This document shows, one piece after another, positions 11,074-35,024 of a DNA stretch of 64,000 nucleotides. The notes below the pieces were generated by a model. That model was not told where the DNA came from and searched no databases. It saw only the letters and a program-made list of their open reading frames with translations. Position numbers and translations under genes: made by a program. Position 1 is the first letter of the stretch. Every line of letters starts with the position of its first letter. Location: assembly GCF_000315625.1 (NCBI RefSeq), contig NW_005434636.1, positions 62,001 to 126,000 of the forward strand, given 5' to 3'. The stretch is from Guillardia theta CCMP2712. Its lineage: Eukaryota > Protista > Cryptophyta.

Positions 11074-11318
11074 TGTGTGCGGCTTCGAGAGGTTCTGGCC
11101 CGTTGACTTTTACGGCAGGACCAAGAGCGACATGGTTAGGAGCAGGAGAAGAACTCAGAGCCTTGTGGTTCAACAGAGAGGCCGACTGTGCGACAAGTTG
11201 GATCTTGAAAGGCTCGTCATGCAGACTCTTCAAGCACCTGAAAGTAGAGTCAGTCAACACTGCCAAATCTACTCATCTGTCTCTGGTCATGTACTAGTTG
11301 TCTCTCTGCTTTTTGCTA

Positions 11319-11368
<50 letters not shown>

Positions 11369-11655
11369 CGCTCCTTCTGCTCCTGCTCCTGCTCCTGCTC
11401 CTCCTCCCCCTCCTCCTCCCCCTCCTGCTCCTTTTCCTTTTCCTTTTCCTTCTTCTTCTTCTCCTCCTTTTCCTCCTTTTCCTCCTTTTCCTCCTTCTCC
11501 TCCTTTTCCTCCTTCTCCTTTTGCTTCTTCTTCTCCTTCCCCTCCTTCTCCTCCTCCTTCTCCTTCTTCTTCTTCTCCTTCTCCTCCTCCTTCTCCTCCT
11601 CCTTCTCCTCCTTCTCCTTCCCCTTCTTCTGCTTCCTCTTCTTCTCCCCTTCCCT
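11319..11655. repeat. (CTCCTG)n microsatellite grading into a degenerate CCT/CTT polypyrimidine tract
   Basis: Seen directly in the sequence. Confidence 0.95.
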
Positions 11656-11963
11656 CTGATCTCATATTTCTGCTATCGTCATTTTCGAAGCCCAGCTTCC
11701 GGACCTACCTTTTCAGAACTTTTTACACGCCTGCAACACGCCTTCTCACCAAGTTCCGAGTTCAAAACTCAGTCAAGTTTCAACTTTCAAACTTCATCCG
11801 GCACTCAACTTCATAGTCTACTGATCCGATCAGATCGGTCTCCCAGCACCAGTCATCATCCATTAGAGACATGAAACTTCATTAATCTCTTACAAACTTG
11901 AGACAACAATATGTATCACTCAAAAACGTAAGATGACTTGATTTATCATATGTTATCCAACAG

Positions 11964-14900
11964 CTAATGATTCGCACTTGGGAAAGAGAGGGAGGATTTC
12001 GGTCGCTTGCTCTGAGGAGTCTCCGCGTCCTCCTGGCAAGAAAATCATTACTATCATCGCCACCACAACCACCACCATTTCACATAATCATAATCACCAT
12101 CACGAATCATCATCATTACCATCACGAATCATCATCATTACCATCACGAATCATCATCATTACCATCGCGAATCATCATCATCACCATCACAACAGCTTC
12201 GTTCAACACTTACCTCGACCATATGGCGAGCATCTCTCTTTGGCGTATTTTTGCAGCCATTTTCATCACCCACAGAAATAGACGTCGAGAGATTTTGAAG
12301 AGACTTAAGATCTCTTATCTTCTTTTCCTCCTGCACAATCTTGGTGCAGTGTCCTTTGATCTCCTGCCGGCAAACATCACAAATCACAAATCACTTTCAC
12401 ACTTGTCTCACTGACCTGCAGCAGATTCTCCATCGACTCCGCTGCCTTGTACTCGTGCTTGAGCGCCTGCTGCGTCCTCGATCTCCAGTCGTTCGCGACT
12501 CCCAGCACGTTTCTTGTCGTGTCATCCACTCGCCTTCCGATGATTCTCGTCCCATCCCACGTCAGCACGTCATTGGGCGCGTCAAGTCCCACAGCCAGCT
12601 CGCCTCTAGCAGCACGATAGCTGGAGGCCTTCTCTTGCTCGTCAAACACCACGAGCCTGTCGAAGAAACGACGAGCAAGACTGCTCAGACCCGCCACCTC
12701 TGCCGTCGGCCGCACGAACTTGCTCGCCCTCCCCAGGGCTCCCGGGACCTCCTGTGCTTCAAGCCCCTCTTCATTGAGCCCCTCCAGGCACAGGGCGCGC
12801 ATGGTGACGTCGTTGGGTCGGCGCGCAACCTTGTCAAGGAAGTCGTTCATGCGGCTCCTGGAAGCGAAGACGAGGGTGGAGAGCTCGAAGCCGAAGGCTG
12901 TCGACATGGCGGTCTGAAGCTCCAACGCTCGCCTGTCATCGATGAGAAAGAGGGAGGCAACACAGCCAAGACAGTTGCTGCTGCTCTCGCGAGGAACGTT
13001 TGCCTCGTGCTTGCAGGAGGGAAAGACTGTCCTGTTGATGCGACTCGTCTCCTCCTCGTTGTGTTGCATGCAGCCTTGTGCGACTGAGATCCACTCCTCA
13101 CACAAGCTGACGCGTTGATTTACGTCCTCCATGTTGTTCAACTTGCGGGAGAATTCCTGGATTCGATTAGACAAGAAGCTGTTGAGAGGCATCTTCTGCA
13201 AGCAACCAGCAATCTTGTGCTTGCAGCTGGCGATCTCGTTCTCACTCTCTGAGATCTCTTTCTCTCTGTTCCTTGCCTCCTCTTCTTCCTGCGCGACTCC
13301 AGCGTCCACATCAGGCATGTCGCTGTCTGTTGCCGTGTCGTTGAAGTACAAGTTGACCGGCTTGCCGCAAGTCGTCATAGCAAGATCGAAGTTGCTCTCG
13401 GCGTTGAAGTTGACATTGCATAGCAATGGGTGGCCTCCCTCCGGCTCTCCAACTGGGATGAGCTTGAACCTTGACCGCAATCTGGAGGAGGAGGAAGAGA
13501 GTTGGATGGGGTCTGCCTCAATCGCGAAGTATTCCTCTTCCAATACGCTCAAGGTGATGGTCATCTTCCAGTCAGCACCATCATGGAATGATGTCAGGTT
13601 GCCATTCCCGTCGACTGCCTGGGCATTGAAGGTGAACTCATTGCTCCTGTCCCCGCCCACAAGTTTGATTTCCGTGATGCTGAACGAAGCCACTGGACCT
13701 GGACGACAAAGTTACAAAGATGCGAGCTGCAACAGATGCGTCATGATGGAAGGAGGCGATGACGAAGAAGGGTCGGTCATGTTGTATGGAGAAGGGCGAG
13801 AGGAGGAGCCGTTACCTGGTTCAACTTTGAGCTTCAATTTGTTCGACTGGTGTTGCTCGGTTGACGAGTTGCAGGGTCTGCTATCCTTGAACTCCGCCTT
13901 CACATCCATCCACCCCACCTTGTCCAGGAAGAACTTGCACTCGAGCTGCTTGCCATCGAACTTCCCGAAGGTAGTCGCCACCTCCTCCTTCCTCCGAGAG
14001 CCGAACATGCAGAGTTTCACGTCCGGAATTTCGGAGTTGGGGTCTTTCAAAGGCTTCCCGTCCTCCGTGTGGAAAATTATCCGAGCAGTGAACTCAGCGT
14101 CGAGCTTTCCTGACTCACGTTTTGCAAGCTTCTGCGTTCTTTCATCAACTTGCAACTCAAGTTGCTTGACTGTGTTGCCAGCAACAGCGATGACGCGCAA
14201 CTCAAGAGGTTTCAAAATCTTGACATTCATCGACTCGACTTGTACCGTCATGTTGTGTTTGCCTTTGGGCAAGGGAGGAAGGTGCGTCAGTCTGAATGCT
14301 ACCTCTCTTCCTTCCTCTCTCCATTTCTCCAAGGCTGGGAGTTCTCGTTTCCCGATGTTTGCCTTGACAACTGTATCCCAGGCGTCAGACAGGTTGTTCT
14401 GTAGTCTGTCTATCAGTTTGAAACGGATGTCACAAGCGTATTCAGCGTTGTAGGGGATTTCTAGTGGAAACAGGTCGGAGGTATGGTAGTCCTTGTCCAC
14501 GACGATGGAATATGGCTTTCCAACCTTGAGATCGACGTTGTGCTCTAGAGCTCGAAGGAGAAAGCACTTGTCACTTCGAGAGGCCGGCCTGATTGTCATC
14601 TCCATCATCAGCTTGCCCGTGGTTGCTTTGCATTCGATGACGACGTTCTTCAGCACGAAATGAGAATTGTGCAAGGCAAAGTTGCCTTGACCTCCGTCGA
14701 GGATCTCTTCAAGATTGTTGTTCCAAAACTTGACCTCGATCTCCTGCCGGGCGTCTGTCTCGAACTTGAGTCGAGATGTTTGGAAATCGAACTCAAACTG
14801 CCTCAGGTTGTCGAACTGATTCCCGTTGCGATCGCAGACGGTACCGAGGAGAGTGAAGGGCTCTCCCACTACGATGGGCTTGTTTCCTTCTACTTCAAGC

Positions 14901-17900
14901 TTCAGCCTTGCCGGGTCCTCTCGCCGAACTTTCACCTTGAAGGACAACTGCCTCTCAGTCTGACCATACTTCACAGTCAGTTTGTATTCATCGTCTTTCT
15001 TCGCTAAGATCTGCGGGAGTTGCAATGTTGTCATATGTCCGGGCTTAAAGTTCAAAACTTGTTGTTGGCTCCAGTTACATCTGACTTGAACTTTCACGTC
15101 GCCAGAGCATGGCAGCAGCGCCTCGTCGCAAGCCTTGAGGTGGAGGTCCGCTATGGCAGCATCATGCTCTGCTTCAATCGTCTCTCTGTCCTCCCCCCCT
15201 GGCAGATGGAGAAGTTGCAAGGCGAGCCGCTTCGCTTGAGAGCCATCGAGACTCTCCGGTGAAGCAGCTGGTCTCGACTGTGCGAGAAGACGTCCAATGA
15301 CGCTCCAAGTTGTCGAGGACAGTCGTCGCATGGCGCGAAGTAGACGCTGTCGCTCAAAGCCCTGGGGTCAAGACTGTCCTTGAGGGATTCGTGAAGTACG
15401 AAGATTCTCCTGTGGAGGCTCATGGGGTCCAAGACCTCGCTAGCATCGGGCAAGGGCAAGAGGAGACGGGAGCTGTCTGAACGCTTGAAGTACTTGATGC
15501 GCCAAGTGTTCCCCCCTTGCTCCTTGCAGACTGACTCTATCCTACCAGGATGGTACTCATTTCTCCCTGTTTTTAACTTGAAAAGAACTTCCACCCAGTC
15601 CCCAACGCAGAAGAATCCATGAAAAGGGTTGAGAAAGCCGATGGGTTTGAGCTGCTTGGCGATCAATTCGTTCCACGTCTCCTCCAGCTCAACTCCTGAC
15701 TCATCTCTGTTTCTCTTTGTGAGATCCCAACTTCTGACAACACTGCACCTTGTTGCCTCTTTCTGACCTGATTCAGGGCTCAAGAAGTACAAACTCTGAA
15801 CTTGCTTGTCTGTCTGGAAGGTGTGCTTTCCGTGATTCACCTTGCCGCTGATGAAACAATCAGCAAAGTGGAGGTCAGCGCTCGTGAGGTACAGGATGGC
15901 ATCATCAACCCTCGTACACCTGTTCCCGAAACCATCCTGAACAACGCAGGTCAGCTCGGGGAGGACAGAGCGATTGATAAGCTCCAGCCCTTCGCTCTGC
16001 TCTACCTGCAGAGATTGCGCGGCTCCATGGCTGATCTCAATGTTGAAATGTGTCTCCTTACCCTCCCCGTCGTCCCTCATCACGACCAGTTTCGCTGAGA
16101 ACCTTCCGCATTTCTCGCTTTCCACCCTCACGATCTTCATCTGCATCGCGTATCCCTCGAACGTATGCTCGACGTCAAGCTTGACAAGACCCGATGCAAC
16201 CTCAATCTTGGGCTTGTGCGAGACCTTTGGCGGGATGGTGTTCTTGTACTCATCGTACAAGGTGACTTTGAACGAAGATTCCTTGCCATGCTCCATCTTC
16301 ACAAGATCTCTGTCTTCCAATTGCAACTCAACGTCCTTCACATCTCCTGGGTGAATTGTGAAGCGAAAAGGATCGCAAATGAGCGGGTTGCTGCTGTCCT
16401 GCTGCTGTACTGCGCGAACTGTGTACTGCCCAGCTTTTTGCAAGAAGTCGGCATCGGGAAGGAAGGGACTAAAGGTGTATCTGAGCTTGAACCTCTGGTC
16501 TTCTCCTCCCTCTGGCGTCACTATCAGGTCGCATTCTGGTTCGACGGTGATGGACTTTCCTAGGTGGTTGAGGCATTTGAGCTGAAACGGAGAAGTGCTA
16601 TCACCAGCTGTGAACTTCTTGCTCGCATTGACAAATTGAACTCTGTGTACGATAGAGCACTTGTTCTTCTCCTTGCGAGCTTCAAAGTCCTCATCACTCA
16701 GTCGTTTCATGGACCAATCAGGGATCTCAAAGCGTTGGTCTTCCTCCAAACGATTGTTCTTCTCGAGGACGCGGCAAACAACTTTGCCCTTGCAACCTTC
16801 ATGATCATTGGTTGCCTTGAGAAACTTTACCACCTGCCCAACTTTAACGTTTTTAGGCTGCTTGGATCTTTTAAATTCATCTCCTTCAGACAGCTCAATG
16901 TAATCCCCAATCTTGTACTCATTACCACAATAATTGATCTTCTGATGCACAAACATCCCTTCTTTTTCACAGTACGTTGGCTCGTCTTCGAAGGTCAACT
17001 CGTCATCATACTTGCGGTGGCACAACCTCAACCACAGATGGTATGCATTGACAAGTTTGGTGTCGTTGAGAGCTTTGCGCAATTGGTCCAGGTAAGAATC
17101 TTGGCCATTCACGTTGTCGCTCAAACTAGTTTTGTTGGATTTGGGTTCGATACCTCTGTCGAGGAAGAGGATGCCAAATGTTCTCTTGAGGCATTTTACA
17201 GGAACCTTGCTCTCTGCTAAGTCCTTCTTCATAAATTCTGGCATGAATTGATCTGCTAGCAGCAACCTCCCCATCCAGAAAACCAGAAACCTTCTGTCCT
17301 CTCCAGACGAGTGTCCAAAGAACCGATCAACGTATTGAATGGTTTCCTTGTTGTCCTTGTTTGGGAAGTAAAAGAGCGCTCCCATCGCAATCGATCCACC
17401 CTCTTGCTGATCCACATTGCCTTTCTCCAGCTCTATGTGTATGGGAAAGCAATCCACGGCCGCGTCGCTCAGCAGCGTGTTCAGACAGGAAATGCTTTTT
17501 GACAGCGAAGCCTCCACTTCCTGTCTCAGTCCAGTCGCATCAGGATAGATCAGCTTGCAGCTGATATTCAAGCGAGGAGAAGTTTTCGCCCTCTTGCAAC
17601 CTCGCATGGCCTCTTGCAGCTTGCGCTTGTCATCTTCCATCCTCTTCACTTCAGGTTTCGTGTTCATTCGTATCTTGTTGAGCCCTTCTCTGTGAACGCA
17701 AGTATCATCCAACAACTTGAGGATTTTGCGGGCTACAAAGTGATATCCGGGCATCTTGTCACCAAGGAACATGAAGTATATCATTCCAAGATTATTCACG
17801 ACCTCCTCCCATCCTTGGAGCGTGCTTGACGAGCCTCCGGTTGTGAGCAGCGAAGTTTTGAACTGATCGATGTCGATCTTGCAGTAGCTCTTGCTAATTT

Positions 17901-18842
17901 CATCATCATCATCATCGATGTATTGCTCAAAGCTCTCTGCTTCCCATTTCTCCTCGTCCCGATCCGTGGTGGAGTGGATCAATGAACTTCCCTTGACCTT
18001 ACTCGCGATGTTGATGATTATGCCTAGGGAGTGGCCTGCTTTCTTCGATCCGACTCCATACCGTGAGAACATCCCGCAAGTGTACCTATCGAACGTCTTG
18101 CACTTGGGATTATATCTGTCTGATACCTCTGCCTTTTCAGATCCATACCGGAGCAATCTTTCCGGATCCTCACAGCCAACTCCATTGTCATGTATGGAGA
18201 AAGTTTTATCAATGACGTTGAAACAAATCACAATCGTTTTCTCATCCATTCCATTCCGCATCACCGCTTCGATCGAATTGTCAAGCAATTCAGCGACGGC
18301 TGACAGTAGCGAGTAGTCACATGTCGCGCCCTCTTTGAATCGTGGCTTTTCGGGAGCGGTGCTCATTATTCCCATGCAGACATCATTCACTGATGCGAGT
18401 AGAGGAAATCAACCCAGGCAGAAAGATCAGAAACCCATGATTGCACCAGTGAAGCTTACCGTCTTGTACGAAACGCAACCTACATTTCCCATTGCTTATA
18501 CACGAGTTGAGCTCGTCATTGTCCGCCAGCTCCCTCCCACGCCCAGTCGCGGCGCAGAGTTTGAAGCCCTTTAGACAACAAGCATCAGAAAACTTCAAAG
18601 CGTATGGATAATTTGTGGAGATTACCTCTTTTCCTGATAGTCCTAACTTCTTGTTCACTTCGGTCAAAATGTCCTGTAAACTCAGAGATGATTTGTATTT
18701 CAAAATGAGTGGGCTATCCAAGCCAAATTGTCAGCGAGAATCCACGAGTTTTCATCACTGACCTCGTGATGTTCGGGTTTTTCTCTTTGATTTTCTTAGA
18801 TGTCAATATTGTCACTTCAATGCTCTTTTTGTCCGTCGGCAT
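11964..18842 (-). CDS. SMCHD1: SMCHD1/GMI1-like protein: UBL - GHKL ATPase - transducer - BAH-like - Ig-like repeats (+ Tudor-like) - SMC hinge
   Basis: GHKL motifs AVAELLDNSIEA, IHDNGVG and FSRYGVGSKKA. SMCHD1-type transducer motifs FWMGRLL, RTFGILF, SNKTSL and WLRLCHRKYD. Repeated Ig-like VxDxxGN motifs. C-terminal hinge LGCVASLF...LVVFD...VLTWDG. Small 5' exons (18470-18842) encode a UBL-sized beta-grasp-like segment. Last exon ends at TAG 11964. Confidence 0.88.
12050..12190. repeat. Degenerate CAT-rich tandem repeat (CATCACGAATCATCATCATTAC units) in the last SMCHD1-like intron
   Basis: Three to four ~22-nt units seen directly. Confidence 0.85.
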
Positions 18843-20912
18843 ACTTTCGTCAAGCAAGAGAAATTCAAGTGGGTTCGCCTCCACCAAGATGCCCGAAAAC
18901 AGTGAAGCACGTGAGAGAGAGCACAGTGAAGAAAAGGCTAGGAGGGGATTTACAGTCAATCAGTTATCAGAGCAGGGCAACAAGACGAGTTGCAAGTGAA
19001 CAGACGCGGCAAGGCAGGAGGATGGGGAGAAGTAGCGGTGAGAACCTACGGGAAATACGGCAAGCGAGGTAAGAAAGTGTATCGGTTTTAGTACCAGATG
19101 GTTACAACATGTATTGGAACAGTACTCGGAATTTCTAATTATATTATTATTTTGTACCATCAATATGTTGGGCTGAGAATCTGTATTTCCACGAACTCAA
19201 AATTGCATCTGAAATATATTCAATCAAGTTTTACATAGGCAAATAACAACTACTTTTAGTATGTCGTCTTTTTATTAGCGTTTAATTCGGTCGCCCAGCC
19301 ACCTAGCTAACGCACCAGTCCTCAAGAAGTACCCAGAGAAGTACCCTGAGAAGTACCCCTCCTTTTGATATCAAAGTACCCATGCCTCTGGGTCCGACAT
19401 GAAATGGGTCGGCATGATTCCTGATGGTATCTGGGGCTAAGAAAAAGATGATCGAGGGGGTAGGGGTACTTACCCATACCCTACCAAACAGTATGGAATC
19501 TTTTATCCACCCCCACCCTCAGGATATCATGCTTGTCCTAGCTTGTGAAACCTTCTGGTCTGCCAACGCCAACGTTCAACACCACCACAGTCGAGAATTC
19601 ACCCCACCCCTCCTCTTAACAAGAGTTCGGATGGAAGAAGACGGGGTACTCCTGTCGGGCGATGGGGTCACTGAGACATCTCCAAGAGAGGGACAACGGA
19701 GGGGTGGTTCAGATTTTTATAACTAATTCGTACCAGAAAATTGGAGTCTATTGTGGGCTCCTGGGAATGTATGTGATAACTAATAATTCTTGTGGTAATA
19801 AATACCTCCAACTGATACACCAATTATGTAACAACACAATTTAATTTGTATATCTAAAACCTTTATAGCCAATCTGGCCATGAATCTTATAATATTTTTG
19901 CAGTAGATTACACGTTGGTCGTCGGCATCTAAAGGAAGTTTTGGCGGGAACAGACGCGTGAGAGGAAGAGGGAGAGGGAGGAAACGAGCAGAAAAACAAG
20001 GTCAATGGGGGACGGGCTGGCTGGGAACGTGGGGGGAGGAACAATCATGCGAGGATAGGGTACATGGTAAAGACGAGAGCAAAGGACAGATGGTTGGAGG
20101 CAAAGGAGGATGAGTGAGGACGTGGGTTACAGATGAGAAGCGTGAGAAAGTTCGTTTCATCAAGTTCGACAATGGAAGTCGCATGGTTGGGGCCTTGAGA
20201 GCAAAGAGAAAGTGAAACCGGGAGATCAAAAACGATGTAGCTCAAGGAGGCAAGATATAACATGGGCATGGGGAAGCAATCGTTCAGTAATGAGAATCAA
20301 ATGTTTGCGAGGGTTCGGCAGTGAGTGGATAACTGAGATAGAGGTGAACCCAAGATACGTCTTAGATCATTGAAGTCCATGACTTCAAAGAGAAATTGAA
20401 GATTTTTGAAGCCGGTGGTCATAGTTGCCGTCAAATTGATGTAGGGAGGGCAAATGAGAATATGCGAGAAAAACTTATCCAAGGGATAAAATAGTGTACA
20501 CAAGGAACATTAGTTGTGTAGGAAGGTTCCAGCGCACTCATGTGATGAGCTACCGTCTCGATGTCACAGATATGTAGCCGACTACAACATTTCAGGGATG
20601 ATTGCATGCAGGGAAGCCAAGAAGTAAAAGATGCCCGCAGTTTTTAGCCTTCTTCCACATTGGTTAGCACGGAATCAGAAAGTCAATCAAGTTCGGTGAA
20701 AGTTGATGCGAAACAGATGAGGAATTATATCATTTAGAAGCTGTTCAGATCAATCAGACATTTCCCTTGGTTCACTTGTGGAAAGTTTCAACTCAGTATT
20801 CAGAGTGAGGAGACGTGCAGAAAGCGTGATGATGAGAAATTAGTTTTCTCGACCATGTAGCCCTCGCTAACGGGCTATTCTCTGCAGTTGTCCGGAGCGA
20901 ATAGCTAGCACA

Positions 20913-30144: not shown

Positions 30145-35024
<4,880 letters not shown>

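What the first reader, a model, noticed from the sequence alone, without database searches (positions are those of the whole stretch)
11964..18842. Full-length SMCHD1/GMI1-like GHKL-SMC hinge protein in a secondary-plastid alga
Seen: UBL-like 5' exons, GHKL motifs with the catalytic Glu (AVAELLDNS), SMCHD1-type transducer motifs (FWMGRLL, WLRLCHRKYD), a BAH-like segment (YKIGDYIEL...GQVVKFL), Ig-like linker repeats and an SMC hinge. Known: this fused architecture is characterised in vertebrates (SMCHD1, silencing and X inactivation) and plants (GMI1, DNA repair). Inference: the architecture is ancient, and this alga may have an undescribed SMCHD1-based silencing or repair pathway.
Basis: partly seen in the sequence, partly recalled or inferred. 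Interest (0 to 1): 0.75.

Follow-up and report, generated by a model that had tools for sequence, protein, structure and literature searches.

The report
SMCHD1-like chromatin ATPase gene in Guillardia
The cryptophyte alga Guillardia theta has an expressed gene for a roughly 2,117-residue protein built domain for domain like animal SMCHD1. The find is sound but ordinary: the family and its age were already known, the public gene model is simply cut short by a one-base assembly error, and the gene is one of at least eight copies.

Summary
Window 11964-18842 (minus strand) is one expressed gene of the Guillardia theta nuclear genome.

- **Transcript:** spliced contigs from two runs cover 12846-18845 in one piece with four GT..AG introns removed.
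- **Assembly error:** these two runs and an unspliced run carry one extra base in a G7 run at 15192/15193. The assembly lacks it. This false frameshift truncates the public model GUITHDRAFT_109200 to 1,171 aa. The corrected CDS is 6,354 nt (2,117 aa) with no internal stop.
- **Family link:** an N-terminal family profile hits human SMCHD1 (6mw7) at E 6e-54, against 0.025 for the best MORC.
- **Hinge:** it has no direct Pfam hit, but its model matches SMC hinges at Z about 13, and 6 of 7 paralogue exons hit SMC_hinge weakly.

The genome holds at least eight such loci, seven with a hinge exon. Three paralogues are already annotated full length, and UniProt names them by the SMCHD1 domain. The fused lineage was called ancient in 2008. 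This scan already reported a full-length SMCHD1/GMI1 homologue on other DNA of this genome (s1-441171). It is a new member of a known kind, and its function is untested.

The parts
18763..18842 (-). Exon 1. It holds the ATG (18842-18840) and the start of the UBL-like domain.
   Evidence: RNA contigs of X1 and X2 join 18763 to 18713. It matches the N-terminus of P0001.
18714..18762 (-). Intron 1 (49 nt, GT..AG).
   Evidence: Skipped in the contigs of X1 and X2 and kept in the unspliced run X11. Splice dinucleotides checked.
18626..18713 (-). Exon 2 (UBL-like).
18569..18625 (-). Intron 2 (57 nt, GT..AG).
   Evidence: One search reports a joint 18567/18625 with 'cut +1'. The sequence shows GAG|GTAATC ... 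CTAAAG|GGC.
18460..18568 (-). Exon 3 (end of the UBL-like domain; residues up to 92).
   Evidence: The profile alignment to human SMCHD1 begins at chain residue 33, inside its UBL.
18390..18459 (-). Intron 3 (70 nt, GT..AG).
13816..18389 (-). Exon 4, one giant exon of 4,575 nt in reality. It runs from the GHKL domain to the Ig-like array.
   Evidence: One contig piece covers 13814-18389 with a single 1-nt gap. All paralogues have one open frame of 1,547-1,603 aa here.
17950..18315 (-). GHKL ATPase core. Motif I is AVAELLDNS, with catalytic Glu126 and Mg-binding Asn130. Motif II is DNGVG and motif III is YGVGSK.
   Evidence: Pfam HATPase_c_3, 2.8e-8. The motif residues are invariant across the family alignment. 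They align to the E147(A) and N151 region of human SMCHD1.
17011..17484 (-). SMCHD1-type S5 transducer domain. It holds FWMGRLL, the switch lysine (K512 of P0001) and WLRLCHRKYD.
   Evidence: Pfam PF22899 at 5.5e-14, 52.8 bits against a cut-off of 27. It aligns to 6mw7 residues 449-558. K512 is invariant.
16657..17004 (-). BAH domain 1 (P0001 555-670).
   Evidence: In the AF2 model, residues 1-116 match DNMT1 BAH1 7lmk (Z 9.8, 95 aa) and TNRC18 BAH (Z 9.7). It sits where human SMCHD1 has its BAH, residues 571-688. No Pfam BAH hit falls on this segment.
15775..16653 (-). Three filamin-type Ig-like domains (P0001 about 672-964).
   Evidence: The AF2 model is all-beta with pLDDT about 80-90. The best-placed domain (model 220-328) matches the Lin-41 filamin domain (Z 9.6, rmsd 2.5 A) and the TRIM3 filamin domain (Z 9.4). 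Tandem-Ig proteins head the Foldseek list.
15304..15672 (-). BAH domain 2 (P0001 about 999-1121).
   Evidence: Matches, as Z / rmsd: MTA1 BAH 7ao8_D 10.6 / 2.6 A; EBS 9.4; ORC1b 9.2; Sir3 9.1; AIPP3 8.8 / 2.3 A. Three paralogue or homologue segments give weak Pfam BAH hits (best 0.003). The two located fall in this domain (0.0037 and 0.058, below the cut-off).
15192..15199 (-). Assembly error: the G run reads G7 in the window and G8 in the reads. It creates the false stop at 15151-15153 that truncates the public model.
   Evidence: An extra base sits behind 15192 in X1, X2 and the unspliced X11. Paralogues and Hanusia homologues read straight through. With N inserted the CDS has no internal stop.
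13817..15190 (-). Further beta-rich stretch, presumed Ig-like array. Its fold was not tested.
   Evidence: It is conserved in all paralogues. Atlas feature hits point to filamin/invasin Ig families, but at scores of 0.86-0.89, which makes them leads only.
13699..13815 (-). Intron 4 (117 nt, GT..AG). Its position is conserved in the paralogues, after '...PG'.
12416..13698 (-). Exon 5: last Ig-like domain, coiled coil, SMC hinge and the start of the C-terminal helix.
   Evidence: AF2 model with pLDDT 79. Paralogue exons match at E 1e-32 to 7e-98.
13337..13684 (-). Last Ig-like domain (exon-5 residues 4-119).
   Evidence: Beta-sandwich matches at Z 8-8.7.
13031..13303 (-). Coiled-coil helices leading into the hinge.
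   Evidence: Helices 131-166, 176-187 and 191-221 in the model. They align with the coiled coils of hinge constructs 4rsi, 4rsj and 6oit.
12494..13012 (-). SMC hinge domain (exon-5 residues about 228-400).
   Evidence: The top 48 Foldseek PDB hits are all SMC hinges, with E down to 3.8e-8. VIA matches: DMS3 Z 13.5 (3.2 A over 167 aa); T. maritima SMC Z 13.3 (2.8 A over 150 aa); mouse SMCHD1 hinge Z 7.9. Six of 7 paralogue exons hit Pfam SMC_hinge weakly, and this copy does not. The homodimer model scores 0.63 against a best control of 0.01.
12364..12415 (-). Intron 5 (52 nt, GT..AG). Predicted only.
   Evidence: Splice sites and frame were checked. The donor position ('L-K/Q | V') is shared by the paralogue exons, and the spliced paralogue model P0011 continues with a similar 'EI.K.C' stretch. 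The reads call did not cover it.
12214..12363 (-). Exon 6 (continuation of the C-terminal helix and tail).
12033..12213 (-). Intron 6 (181 nt, GT..AG). Predicted only. It holds a short tandem repeat.
   Evidence: The length of the X1 contig beyond 12846 (716 nt) fits removal of both 3' introns plus about 67 nt of 3' UTR, but this was not shown directly.
11964..12032 (-). Exon 7, a basic tail containing KRPK, and the TAG stop (11966-11964).

Best explanation
Window 11964-18842 (minus strand) is a single, intact, transcribed nuclear gene of Guillardia theta. It encodes a roughly 2,117-aa member of the SMCHD1/GMI1 family.

**Domain order:** UBL, GHKL ATPase, SMCHD1-type S5 transducer, BAH, three filamin-type Ig domains, a second BAH, a further Ig-like array, a short coiled coil, an SMC hinge and a coiled-coil tail.

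**Why the public model stops at 1,171 aa:** the assembly lacks one G in a homopolymer.

**Likely mechanism.** This is inferred from the anatomy and from published work on mammalian SMCHD1. None of it was measured here.
1. The C-terminal hinge holds two chains together permanently.
2. The N-terminal UBL-GHKL-transducer modules dimerise on ATP binding and part on hydrolysis. Hydrolysis uses Glu126 as catalytic base, Asn130 for Mg and Lys512 as the switch lysine.
3. The hinge and the BAH-Ig module contact nucleic acid or chromatin.
4. The dimer would then act as an ATP-regulated clamp that compacts or bridges chromatin, serving silencing and/or DNA-damage repair.

The gene belongs to a cryptophyte-specific expansion of at least eight loci in this genome, split into two subfamilies.
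For: **One gene, transcribed**
- Spliced contigs of 6,630 nt (X1) and 6,521 nt (X2) cover 12846-18845 with four GT..AG introns removed. The unspliced run X11 keeps them.
- The frameshift is absent from all three contig runs that cover the site (X1, X2, X11).
- The corrected CDS is 6,354 nt with no internal stop.

**Family**
- Pfam SMCHD1_S5 at 5.5e-14 and HATPase_c_3 at 2.8e-8.
- The protein alone hits 6mw7 at 4.8e-4. The cryptophyte profile scores 2.6e-14.
- The wider N-terminal profile scores 6e-54 and aligns from inside the UBL to the end of the transducer. On that profile MORC4 scores 0.025 and MORC3 0.16.
- The catalytic and switch residues are invariant.

**BAH domains and Ig array**
- AF2 model with pLDDT 81.9.
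- BAH matches at Z 9.7-10.6 and filamin-domain matches at Z 9.6.
- BAH1 sits at the same position as the human SMCHD1 BAH, residues 571-688, which is followed by IGL-1.

**Hinge**
- AF2 model with pLDDT 79.
- All top Foldseek hits are SMC hinges, with VIA Z about 13.
- Paralogue exons hit Pfam SMC_hinge.
- The homodimer model scores 0.63. The best of 3 controls scores 0.01. On eukaryotes the mark was reached by 17 of 29 proteins solved as pairs of one chain and by 0 of 30 solved as single chains. Contact agreement between runs was at least 91% and partner pLDDT at least 64.

**Paralogues**
-.
Against: - This copy's hinge exon has no direct Pfam or PDB sequence hit. The hinge-exon profile also found no solved hinge.
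- That profile did not retrieve animal SMCHD1 or plant GMI1 among 1.84 billion representatives. It found only cryptophyte proteins and a few metagenome proteins.
- The modelled hinge is nearer to DMS3 and to canonical SMC hinges (Z about 13) than to the mouse SMCHD1 hinge crystal structure (Z 7.9).
- I built no tree that includes SMCHD1, GMI1 and MORC.
- The two 3' introns and residues 1159-1617 rest on prediction alone.
- RNA support comes from assembled contigs, not long reads. Only 7 raw RNA reads were laid from X17, so expression there is low.
- The dimer pass may reflect the model's memory of solved hinge dimers.
- All functional statements are by analogy.
Confidence: 0.85

Rival explanations
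1. The protein is the same, but its main job is double-strand-break repair, as reported for plant GMI1 and as one role of SMCHD1, rather than heritable silencing.
For: SMCHD1 accumulates at DNA damage sites (PMC4004971, listed). From my own knowledge, GMI1 was described as a gamma-irradiation-induced repair factor. The modelled hinge is closest to the plant hinge protein DMS3. Nothing in the sequence separates the two roles.
Against: Two BAH domains are typical of chromatin-reader and silencing proteins such as DNMT1, ORC1, Sir3, EBS and AIPP3. No damage-induction data were available.
Confidence: 0.3
2. The cryptophyte SMCHD1-like genes are a diversifying genome-defence family. Each of eight or more paralogues would be aimed by its BAH and Ig modules at different invading or repeated DNA, such as transposons, viral DNA or DNA transferred from the nucleomorph or plastid. 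This gene would be one specialised member rather than a housekeeping orthologue.
For: - At least eight loci carry the domain. Three lie on contig C62: two head-to-head near-identical copies and a third copy with no hinge exon found.
- The subfamilies share only about 30% identity.
- Eukaryotic MORC-type modules trace back to prokaryotic restriction-modification systems (PMC2292703).
Against: The duplications predate the Guillardia/Hanusia split and the catalytic motifs are conserved in all copies. That pattern fits stable subfunctionalisation as well as an arms race. I ran no test of positive selection and have no target data.
Confidence: 0.15
3. The locus is a pseudogene or two separate genes. 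The frameshift at 15192 would be real, the GHKL half (the 1,171-aa model) would stand alone, and the Ig-hinge half would be a separate or dead gene.
For: The reference assembly and the NCBI model GUITHDRAFT_109200 stop at 15151.
Against: - All three contig runs that cover the site, from two organism labels and three studies, carry the extra base, including the unspliced DNA-like run.
- One spliced contig crosses the site.
- Both flanks stay open and conserved against the paralogues and Hanusia transcripts.
Confidence: 0.03
4. It is a MORC-type or other GHKL protein whose C-terminus only superficially resembles an SMC hinge.
For: This copy has no direct Pfam SMC_hinge hit. MORC and SMCHD1 share the GHKL+S5 plan.
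Against: - The SMCHD1-specific S5 model scores over its cut-off and no MORC S5 model appears at E 0.1 or better.
- 6mw7 scores 6e-54 against 0.025 for MORC4.
- The hinge fold matches at Z about 13 over 150-167 residues at about 3 A.
- No CW zinc finger was found.
Confidence: 0.02

Closest known systems
Vertebrate SMCHD1 (structures 6mw7 for the N-terminal module and 6n64 for the hinge)
   Same: The order UBL, GHKL, S5 transducer, BAH, Ig-like domains, short coiled coil, C-terminal SMC hinge is colinear, and the size is similar (2,117 against about 2,005 aa). The catalytic Glu, the Mg-binding Asn and the switch Lys are conserved. The N-terminal profile hits 6mw7 at 6e-54. BAH1 lies exactly where the human BAH (571-688) and IGL-1 lie.
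   Different: Sequence identity is low. The hinge is not linked to SMCHD1 by sequence, and its model fits 6n64 only at Z 7.9. A second BAH domain sits between the Ig arrays; whether SMCHD1 has an equivalent was not tested. There are at least eight paralogues here, whereas by my own knowledge vertebrates have one SMCHD1 gene. Function is unknown.
Plant GMI1 and DMS3
   Same: GMI1 has the same GHKL-to-hinge fusion (my own knowledge; it is cited together with SMCHD1 in papers listed). The DMS3 hinge with its flanking coils is the best structural match to this hinge (6ois_D: Z 13.5, 3.2 A over 167 aa, 20% identity).
   Different: DMS3 has no ATPase module.
MORC ATPases
   Same: Both have a GHKL + S5 ATPase module that dimerises on ATP, and both have chromatin roles. 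Iyer et al. 2008 treat the hinge-fused proteins as a lineage of the MORC module.
   Different: MORC3 and MORC4 match only at E 0.025-0.2 over motif I. There is no MORC S5 hit, no CW finger and no C-terminal hinge in MORCs.
Canonical SMC proteins (cohesin, condensin, Smc5/6, bacterial SMC)
   Same: The hinge fold with flanking coiled coils matches (Z 12-13.5), and a two-fold hinge dimer is predicted.
   Different: This protein has no ABC-type Walker A/B head. The hinge is at the C-terminus and not mid-protein. The long antiparallel coiled-coil arm is replaced by BAH and Ig domains.

Membership tests
SMCHD1/GMI1 family | GHKL (Bergerat-fold) ATPase with catalytic Glu, Mg-binding Asn, and the DxGxG and GxxGxG motifs | tested here: met
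   Pfam HATPase_c_3 at 2.8e-8. E126, N130, D160/G162/G164 and G204/G206 are invariant in the family alignment. They align to the E147/N151 region of SMCHD1.
SMCHD1/GMI1 family | SMCHD1-type S5 transducer domain with the switch lysine | tested here: met
   PF22899 scores 52.8 bits against a cut-off of 27. K512 is invariant and aligns to the human 'NK' of K525.
SMCHD1/GMI1 family | N-terminal ubiquitin-like domain ahead of the GHKL domain | tested here: inconclusive
   The family-profile alignment to 6mw7 starts at chain residue 33, inside the human UBL (24-111). This 92-aa segment was not fold-tested, and the first open frame has no Pfam hit.
SMCHD1/GMI1 family | BAH domain directly after the transducer, followed by Ig-like domains | tested here: met
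   On the predicted fold, model residues 1-116 match BAH domains at Z 9.7-9.8, followed by filamin-type Ig domains at Z 9.6. Sequence-level BAH evidence is weak and, where located, falls in BAH2 of paralogues.
SMCHD1/GMI1 family | C-terminal SMC hinge flanked by short coiled coils | tested here: met
   On the predicted fold, all top 48 Foldseek hits are SMC hinges, with Z 13-13.5 at about 3 A. Helices lie on both sides of the hinge. By sequence, only the paralogues reach Pfam SMC_hinge.
SMCHD1/GMI1 family | All modules on one polypeptide | tested here: met
   A single spliced contig in each of two runs spans them. The CDS is continuous after the indel correction. Paralogues are annotated full length.
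SMCHD1/GMI1 family | Homodimerisation through the hinge | tested here: inconclusive
   The model scores 0.63 against a best control of 0.01. On eukaryotes 17 of 29 solved homodimers and 0 of 30 single chains reached the mark. The pass may come from the model's memory of solved hinge dimers. No experiment was done.
SMCHD1/GMI1 family | Phylogenetic placement with SMCHD1/GMI1 rather than with MORC or MutL | tested here: inconclusive
   Profile scores strongly favour SMCHD1 (6e-54 against 0.025 or weaker). No tree including SMCHD1, GMI1 and MORC could be built, because their sequences were not retrievable with the tools.
SMCHD1/GMI1 family | ATPase activity, chromatin binding, and a role in silencing or repair | not testable with these tools
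   These need biochemistry and genetics.
MORC family | MORC-type S5 domain, usually with a CW zinc finger and a C-terminal coiled coil | tested here: not met
   No MORC S5 or CW hit appears at E 0.1 or better. MORC structures match only motif I, at E 0.025-0.2.
Canonical SMC family | ABC-type head split by a long coiled coil, with a central hinge | tested here: not met
   No SMC_N or ABC hit was found. The ATPase is GHKL and the hinge is C-terminal.

The most novel reading that the evidence does not exclude
Cryptophytes have turned the single-copy SMCHD1 design into a multigene system. Guillardia has at least eight loci in two old subfamilies, each protein carrying two BAH reader-type domains, and the set includes recent head-to-head duplicates and a copy with no hinge exon found. 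In this reading, different paralogues, possibly pairing through their hinges as homo- or heterodimers, recognise different chromatin states or foreign DNA. That would be a diversified chromatin-compaction or genome-defence system in a cell that manages four genomes.
Probability: 0.15. Interest if true: 0.6.

Novelty: new member of a known kind. Interest (0 to 1): 0.35.

Why it matters
- **Annotation fix.** The work corrects a public gene model. GUITHDRAFT_109200 is truncated by a one-base homopolymer error, and the corrected product is about 2,117 aa.
- **Depth of the SMCHD1 plan.** The full mammalian layout, including the UBL, the BAH next to the transducer, and the Ig array, is present in Cryptista. 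That supports the older view that the fusion dates from early eukaryotes.
- **Comparative material.** The second BAH domain and the eight-copy expansion could help those working out how the poorly understood middle of SMCHD1 works.

It does not open a new question by itself, because family membership is already flagged by automatic annotation and nothing is known about function in this alga.

Tried and rejected
**Searches that gave nothing or little**
- Direct Pfam and PDB sequence searches of the hinge exon found nothing.
- The seven-paralogue hinge-exon profile found only chance matches in the PDB.
- Word-based homologue searches with the 1,079-aa frame and with a family alignment gave only 4-5 hits. 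I judge their sensitivity too low to map the family.
- The look-up of encoding contigs for P0001 found nothing on record.
- The large profile search with the hinge exon gave 17 hits. It did not reach animal SMCHD1 or plant GMI1, so it gives no sequence bridge between this hinge and theirs.
- Foldseek on the 604-residue central model was swamped by tandem-Ig proteins. The BAH domains appeared only with the VIA wide search.
- Pfam gave no hit to any Ig_SMCHD1 family in the Ig regions.
- The ESM Atlas feature search of residues 1160-1617 scored below 0.9, so it is a lead only. The Atlas shape search gave TM of 0.41 or less by the query.
- Two SMCHD1 papers I searched (the review PMC7458401 and the preprint 10.1101/2025.07.08.663435) held nothing on BAH, Ig-like domains or evolution.
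- The open frame upstream of the hinge-less copy on C62 has no protease domain by Pfam.
- The careful tree did not finish in time, so only the quick tree is reported.

- The joined spliced protein was not sent to any search or fold tool.
- I used exon-wise references and the database model P0001 instead.
- The join was made only inside a script, with N at the indel, to count length and stops. It was not printed.

**Other limits**
- I did not determine whether the 3' half of this gene has its own public gene model.

Full report
**What is in the sequence**

The finding's coordinates are exactly the coding span of a minus-strand gene. The ATG is at 18842-18840, the first ATG after an in-frame stop, and the TAG is at 11966-11964. 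Four long open frames tile the span:
- 18383-18721 (112 aa)
- 15151-18390 (1,079 aa)
- 13712-15331 (539 aa)
- 12377-13693 (438 aa)

A word search identified the organism. The 1,079-aa frame is 100% identical to GUITHDRAFT_109200 of Guillardia theta CCMP2712, a 1,171-aa model (P0001). UniProt already names it 'SMCHD1 ribosomal S5 domain-containing protein'.

**Gene model and transcription**

I laid four public runs on 12846-18845.
- Two runs (X1 and X2, from different studies and organism labels) each give one contig that covers the whole stretch, of 6,630 nt and 6,521 nt.
- Four segments are skipped, all CT..AC on the plus strand, which is GT..AG on the minus strand: 18762-18714 (49 nt), 18625-18569 (57 nt), 18459-18390 (70 nt) and 13815-13699 (117 nt).
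- The unspliced run X11 keeps these segments. The spliced contigs are therefore RNA-derived.
- X1, X2 and X11 all carry one extra base behind 15192. This is the edge of a G7 run on the coding strand.
- The overlap of the 1,079-aa and 539-aa frames is therefore an assembly error and not a real frameshift or an intron. It explains why the public model ends at a false stop.
- Paralogues and Hanusia phi transcripts read straight through this point.

Two further 3' introns, 12415-12364 and 12213-12033, are predicted only.
- They have GT..AG ends and keep the frame.
- The first has a donor position shared by all paralogue exons. The spliced paralogue model P0011 continues in a similar way after it.

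With N at the indel, the CDS is 6,354 nt (2,117 aa plus stop) with no internal stop. Raw RNA reads (X17) were few: 7 were laid from the roughly 6% of the run that was read. Expression in that sample is low.

All searches used exon references or P0001.

**N-terminal module**

- Pfam finds HATPase_c_3 (2.8e-8) and the SMCHD1-specific S5 family PF22899 (5.5e-14; 52.8 bits against a cut-off of 27). No MORC S5 model appears.
- The sequence alone hits the human SMCHD1 N-terminal structure 6mw7 at 4.8e-4. FWMGRLL aligns to FWNGRLI, and WLRLCHRKYD aligns to WLKDCHEKYD.
- A cryptophyte profile raises this to 2.6e-14.
- A six-sequence profile raises it to 6.1e-54. The profile holds this protein, a paralogue, Hanusia, the malawimonad Gefionella okellyi and two unnamed eukaryotic proteins.
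- That alignment runs from chain residue 33, inside the human UBL (24-111), to residue 558.
- On the same profile, topoisomerase IV B scores 4.8e-4, MORC4 0.025, MORC3 0.16 and PMS1 0.34.
- The catalytic Glu (E126, in AVAELLDNS), Asn130, the DNGxG and YGVGSK motifs, and the switch lysine K512 are invariant in that alignment. They correspond to E147, N151 and K525 of human SMCHD1 as described in bioRxiv 10.64898/2026.02.05.704097.

The UBL claim thus rests on profile alignment only. I did not fold that segment.

**Middle region**

I folded P0001:555-1158 with ten homologous rows. Mean pLDDT is 81.9 and the model is all-beta.
- Foldseek returned only tandem-Ig proteins: S-layer proteins, NUP210, complement, titin and cadherins.
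- The exhaustive VIA search resolved the domains:

| Model residues | Best matches | Reading |
|---|---|---|
| 1-116 | DNMT1 BAH1 (Z 9.8), TNRC18 BAH (Z 9.7) | BAH1 |
| about 118-410 | Lin-41 (Z 9.6, rmsd 2.5 A) and TRIM3 (Z 9.4) filamin domains, on model 220-328 | three filamin-type Ig domains |
| 445-567 | MTA1 (Z 10.6, rmsd 2.6 A), EBS, ORC1b, Sir3, ZMET2, AIPP3 (rmsd 2.3 A), PBRM1, ASH1L | BAH2 |

- DNMT1 and MET1 match both BAH regions at once.
It lies exactly where human SMCHD1 has its BAH (571-688), which is followed by IGL-1 (688-819).
Three homologous central segments give weak Pfam BAH hits (best 0.003). The two I could locate fall in this domain (0.0037 and 0.058, below the cut-off).
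- Residues 1160-1617 are conserved among the paralogues. I did not fold them. Atlas feature hits to filamin/invasin Ig families score 0.86-0.89, which makes them a lead only.
- The Atlas rows show that current Pfam holds 'Ig_SMCHD1_6th/7th/8th' families. An Ig array is therefore a recognised part of SMCHD1.

**Hinge**

This copy's last large exon has no Pfam or PDB sequence hit. Three lines of evidence show that it is still a hinge.
1. The same exon exists 4-5 kb downstream of the S5 domain in six other loci of this genome (E 1e-32 to 7e-98). Six of the seven exons hit Pfam SMC_hinge (best 3.5e-4). In the six-frame genome scan one of them passes the cut-off (24.5 bits).
2. An AF2 model built with 18 rows has pLDDT 79. 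It shows an Ig domain, long helices, an alpha/beta domain at residues 228-400 and a C-terminal helix.
3. Its top 48 Foldseek PDB matches are all SMC hinges, with E down to 3.8e-8. The VIA scores are below.

| Structure | Z | rmsd / aligned |
|---|---|---|
| DMS3 (6ois_D) | 13.5 | 3.2 A / 167 aa, 20% identity |
| T. maritima SMC hinge | 13.3 | 2.8 A / 150 aa |
| Cohesin and condensin hinges | about 13 | about 3 A / about 155 aa |
| Mouse SMCHD1 hinge (6n64) | 7.9 | 3.8 A / 138 aa |

A two-copy model of the hinge fragment passed the tool's mark.
- The score is 0.63, and the best of 3 controls is 0.01.
- On eukaryotes the mark was reached by 17 of 29 solved homodimers and by 0 of 30 single chains.
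- Contact agreement between runs is at least 91%, and partner pLDDT is at least 64.
- The pass may come from the model's memory of solved hinge dimers.

**Family context**

- The genome has eight loci with the SMCHD1_S5 domain, each in an open frame of 1,085-1,603 aa. Seven of them have a hinge exon downstream on the same strand.
- The gene plan is shared: a giant exon, a conserved intron after '...PG', then the hinge exon.
- Three paralogues are already annotated at full length: GUITHDRAFT_141368 (1,962 aa), _121490 (2,120 aa) and _141135 (2,146 aa).
- A quick tree (SH-aLRT only; the careful run did not finish) gives two cryptophyte clades.
  - Clade A holds this gene, the C52 paralogue and one Hanusia protein.
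  - Clade B holds the rest.
  - The Guillardia-Hanusia pairs show that the duplications predate the split of these genera.
- The hinge-exon profile found only 17 proteins among 1.84 billion representatives. They are cryptophyte proteins plus a few metagenome proteins. A 2,073-aa member (P0051) of one hit's cluster also has the SMCHD1_S5 domain.
- Gefionella has the UBL-GHKL-S5 module in proteins of 1,607 and 1,888 aa. Pfam detected no hinge there.

**Comparison with what is known**

- The GHKL+S5-to-hinge fusion was described as 'a distinct ancient eukaryotic lineage' and predicted to loop chromosomes by Iyer, Abhiman and Aravind in 2008 (PMC2292703).
- The BAH next to the ATPase was reported by Brideau et al. 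in 2015 (PMC4628070).
- The only paper in the library that holds both 'SMCHD1' and 'Guillardia' is an unrelated review that mentions each once.
- This scan has already reported a full-length SMCHD1/GMI1 homologue on another piece of this genome, with the same conclusion (s1-441171).

**Mechanism**

What is shown:
- the domain anatomy;
- the conserved catalytic residues;
- a single transcript;
- a predicted hinge dimer.

What is inferred by analogy with SMCHD1:
- constitutive hinge dimerisation;
- an ATP-driven closing and opening cycle of the N-terminal heads;
- nucleic-acid contacts through the hinge and the BAH-Ig module;
- a resulting chromatin clamp used in silencing and/or repair.

The sequence cannot tell silencing from repair.

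**Verdict**

The gene is a new member of a known family in a lineage where it has not been studied. The useful additions are a corrected gene model, a second BAH domain and an eight-copy expansion. Interest is modest.

Noticed in passing
window 15192-15199: The reference assembly has a one-base homopolymer deletion: G7 in the window against G8 in X1, X2 and X11. It truncates the public model GUITHDRAFT_109200. Other homopolymer errors may split genes elsewhere in this assembly.
   Followed up: yes
window about 32404-32721 (+) = G000:C38:94404-94721: A canonical SMC hinge (Pfam SMC_hinge, 71 bits, one TGA inside the match) lies about 14 kb from this gene. It is probably an exon of an intron-rich classical SMC gene. 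The two long open frames nearby gave only weak coiled-coil-type Pfam hits.
   Followed up: partly
G000:C62:39000-69000 (L028, L029) and C62:95000-105000 (L030): Two near-identical SMCHD1-like genes lie head to head about 17 kb apart on contig C62. A third close copy has a 1,588-aa giant exon, but no hinge exon was found downstream. Its upstream 387-aa frame has no significant Pfam domain.
   Followed up: partly
G000:C20:300988-328651 (L014-L016): Three near-identical copies of a gene with long coiled coils and a weak SMC_hinge hit (21.8-24.1 bits) lie within about 25 kb. By eye they look like an Smc5/6-type gene that has been triplicated.
   Followed up: partly
window 11294-11816: Just 3' of the gene there is a low-complexity stretch. 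It yields long spurious open frames on both strands, rich in Ser/Phe, Gly/Glu or Pro/Ala. It is probably simple-repeat intergenic DNA.
   Followed up: no
window 12033-12213: The predicted last intron contains a short tandem repeat, with units like GATGATGATTCGTGATGGTAAT.
   Followed up: no
P0016 and its cluster; P0051 (metagenome proteins): Unnamed metagenome proteins of about 1,800-2,070 aa share the Ig-coiled-coil-hinge end with the cryptophyte family (E 6e-7 and weaker). P0051 also has the SMCHD1_S5 domain. P0016 shows no GHKL or S5 hit in Pfam. Their organisms are unknown.
   Followed up: partly
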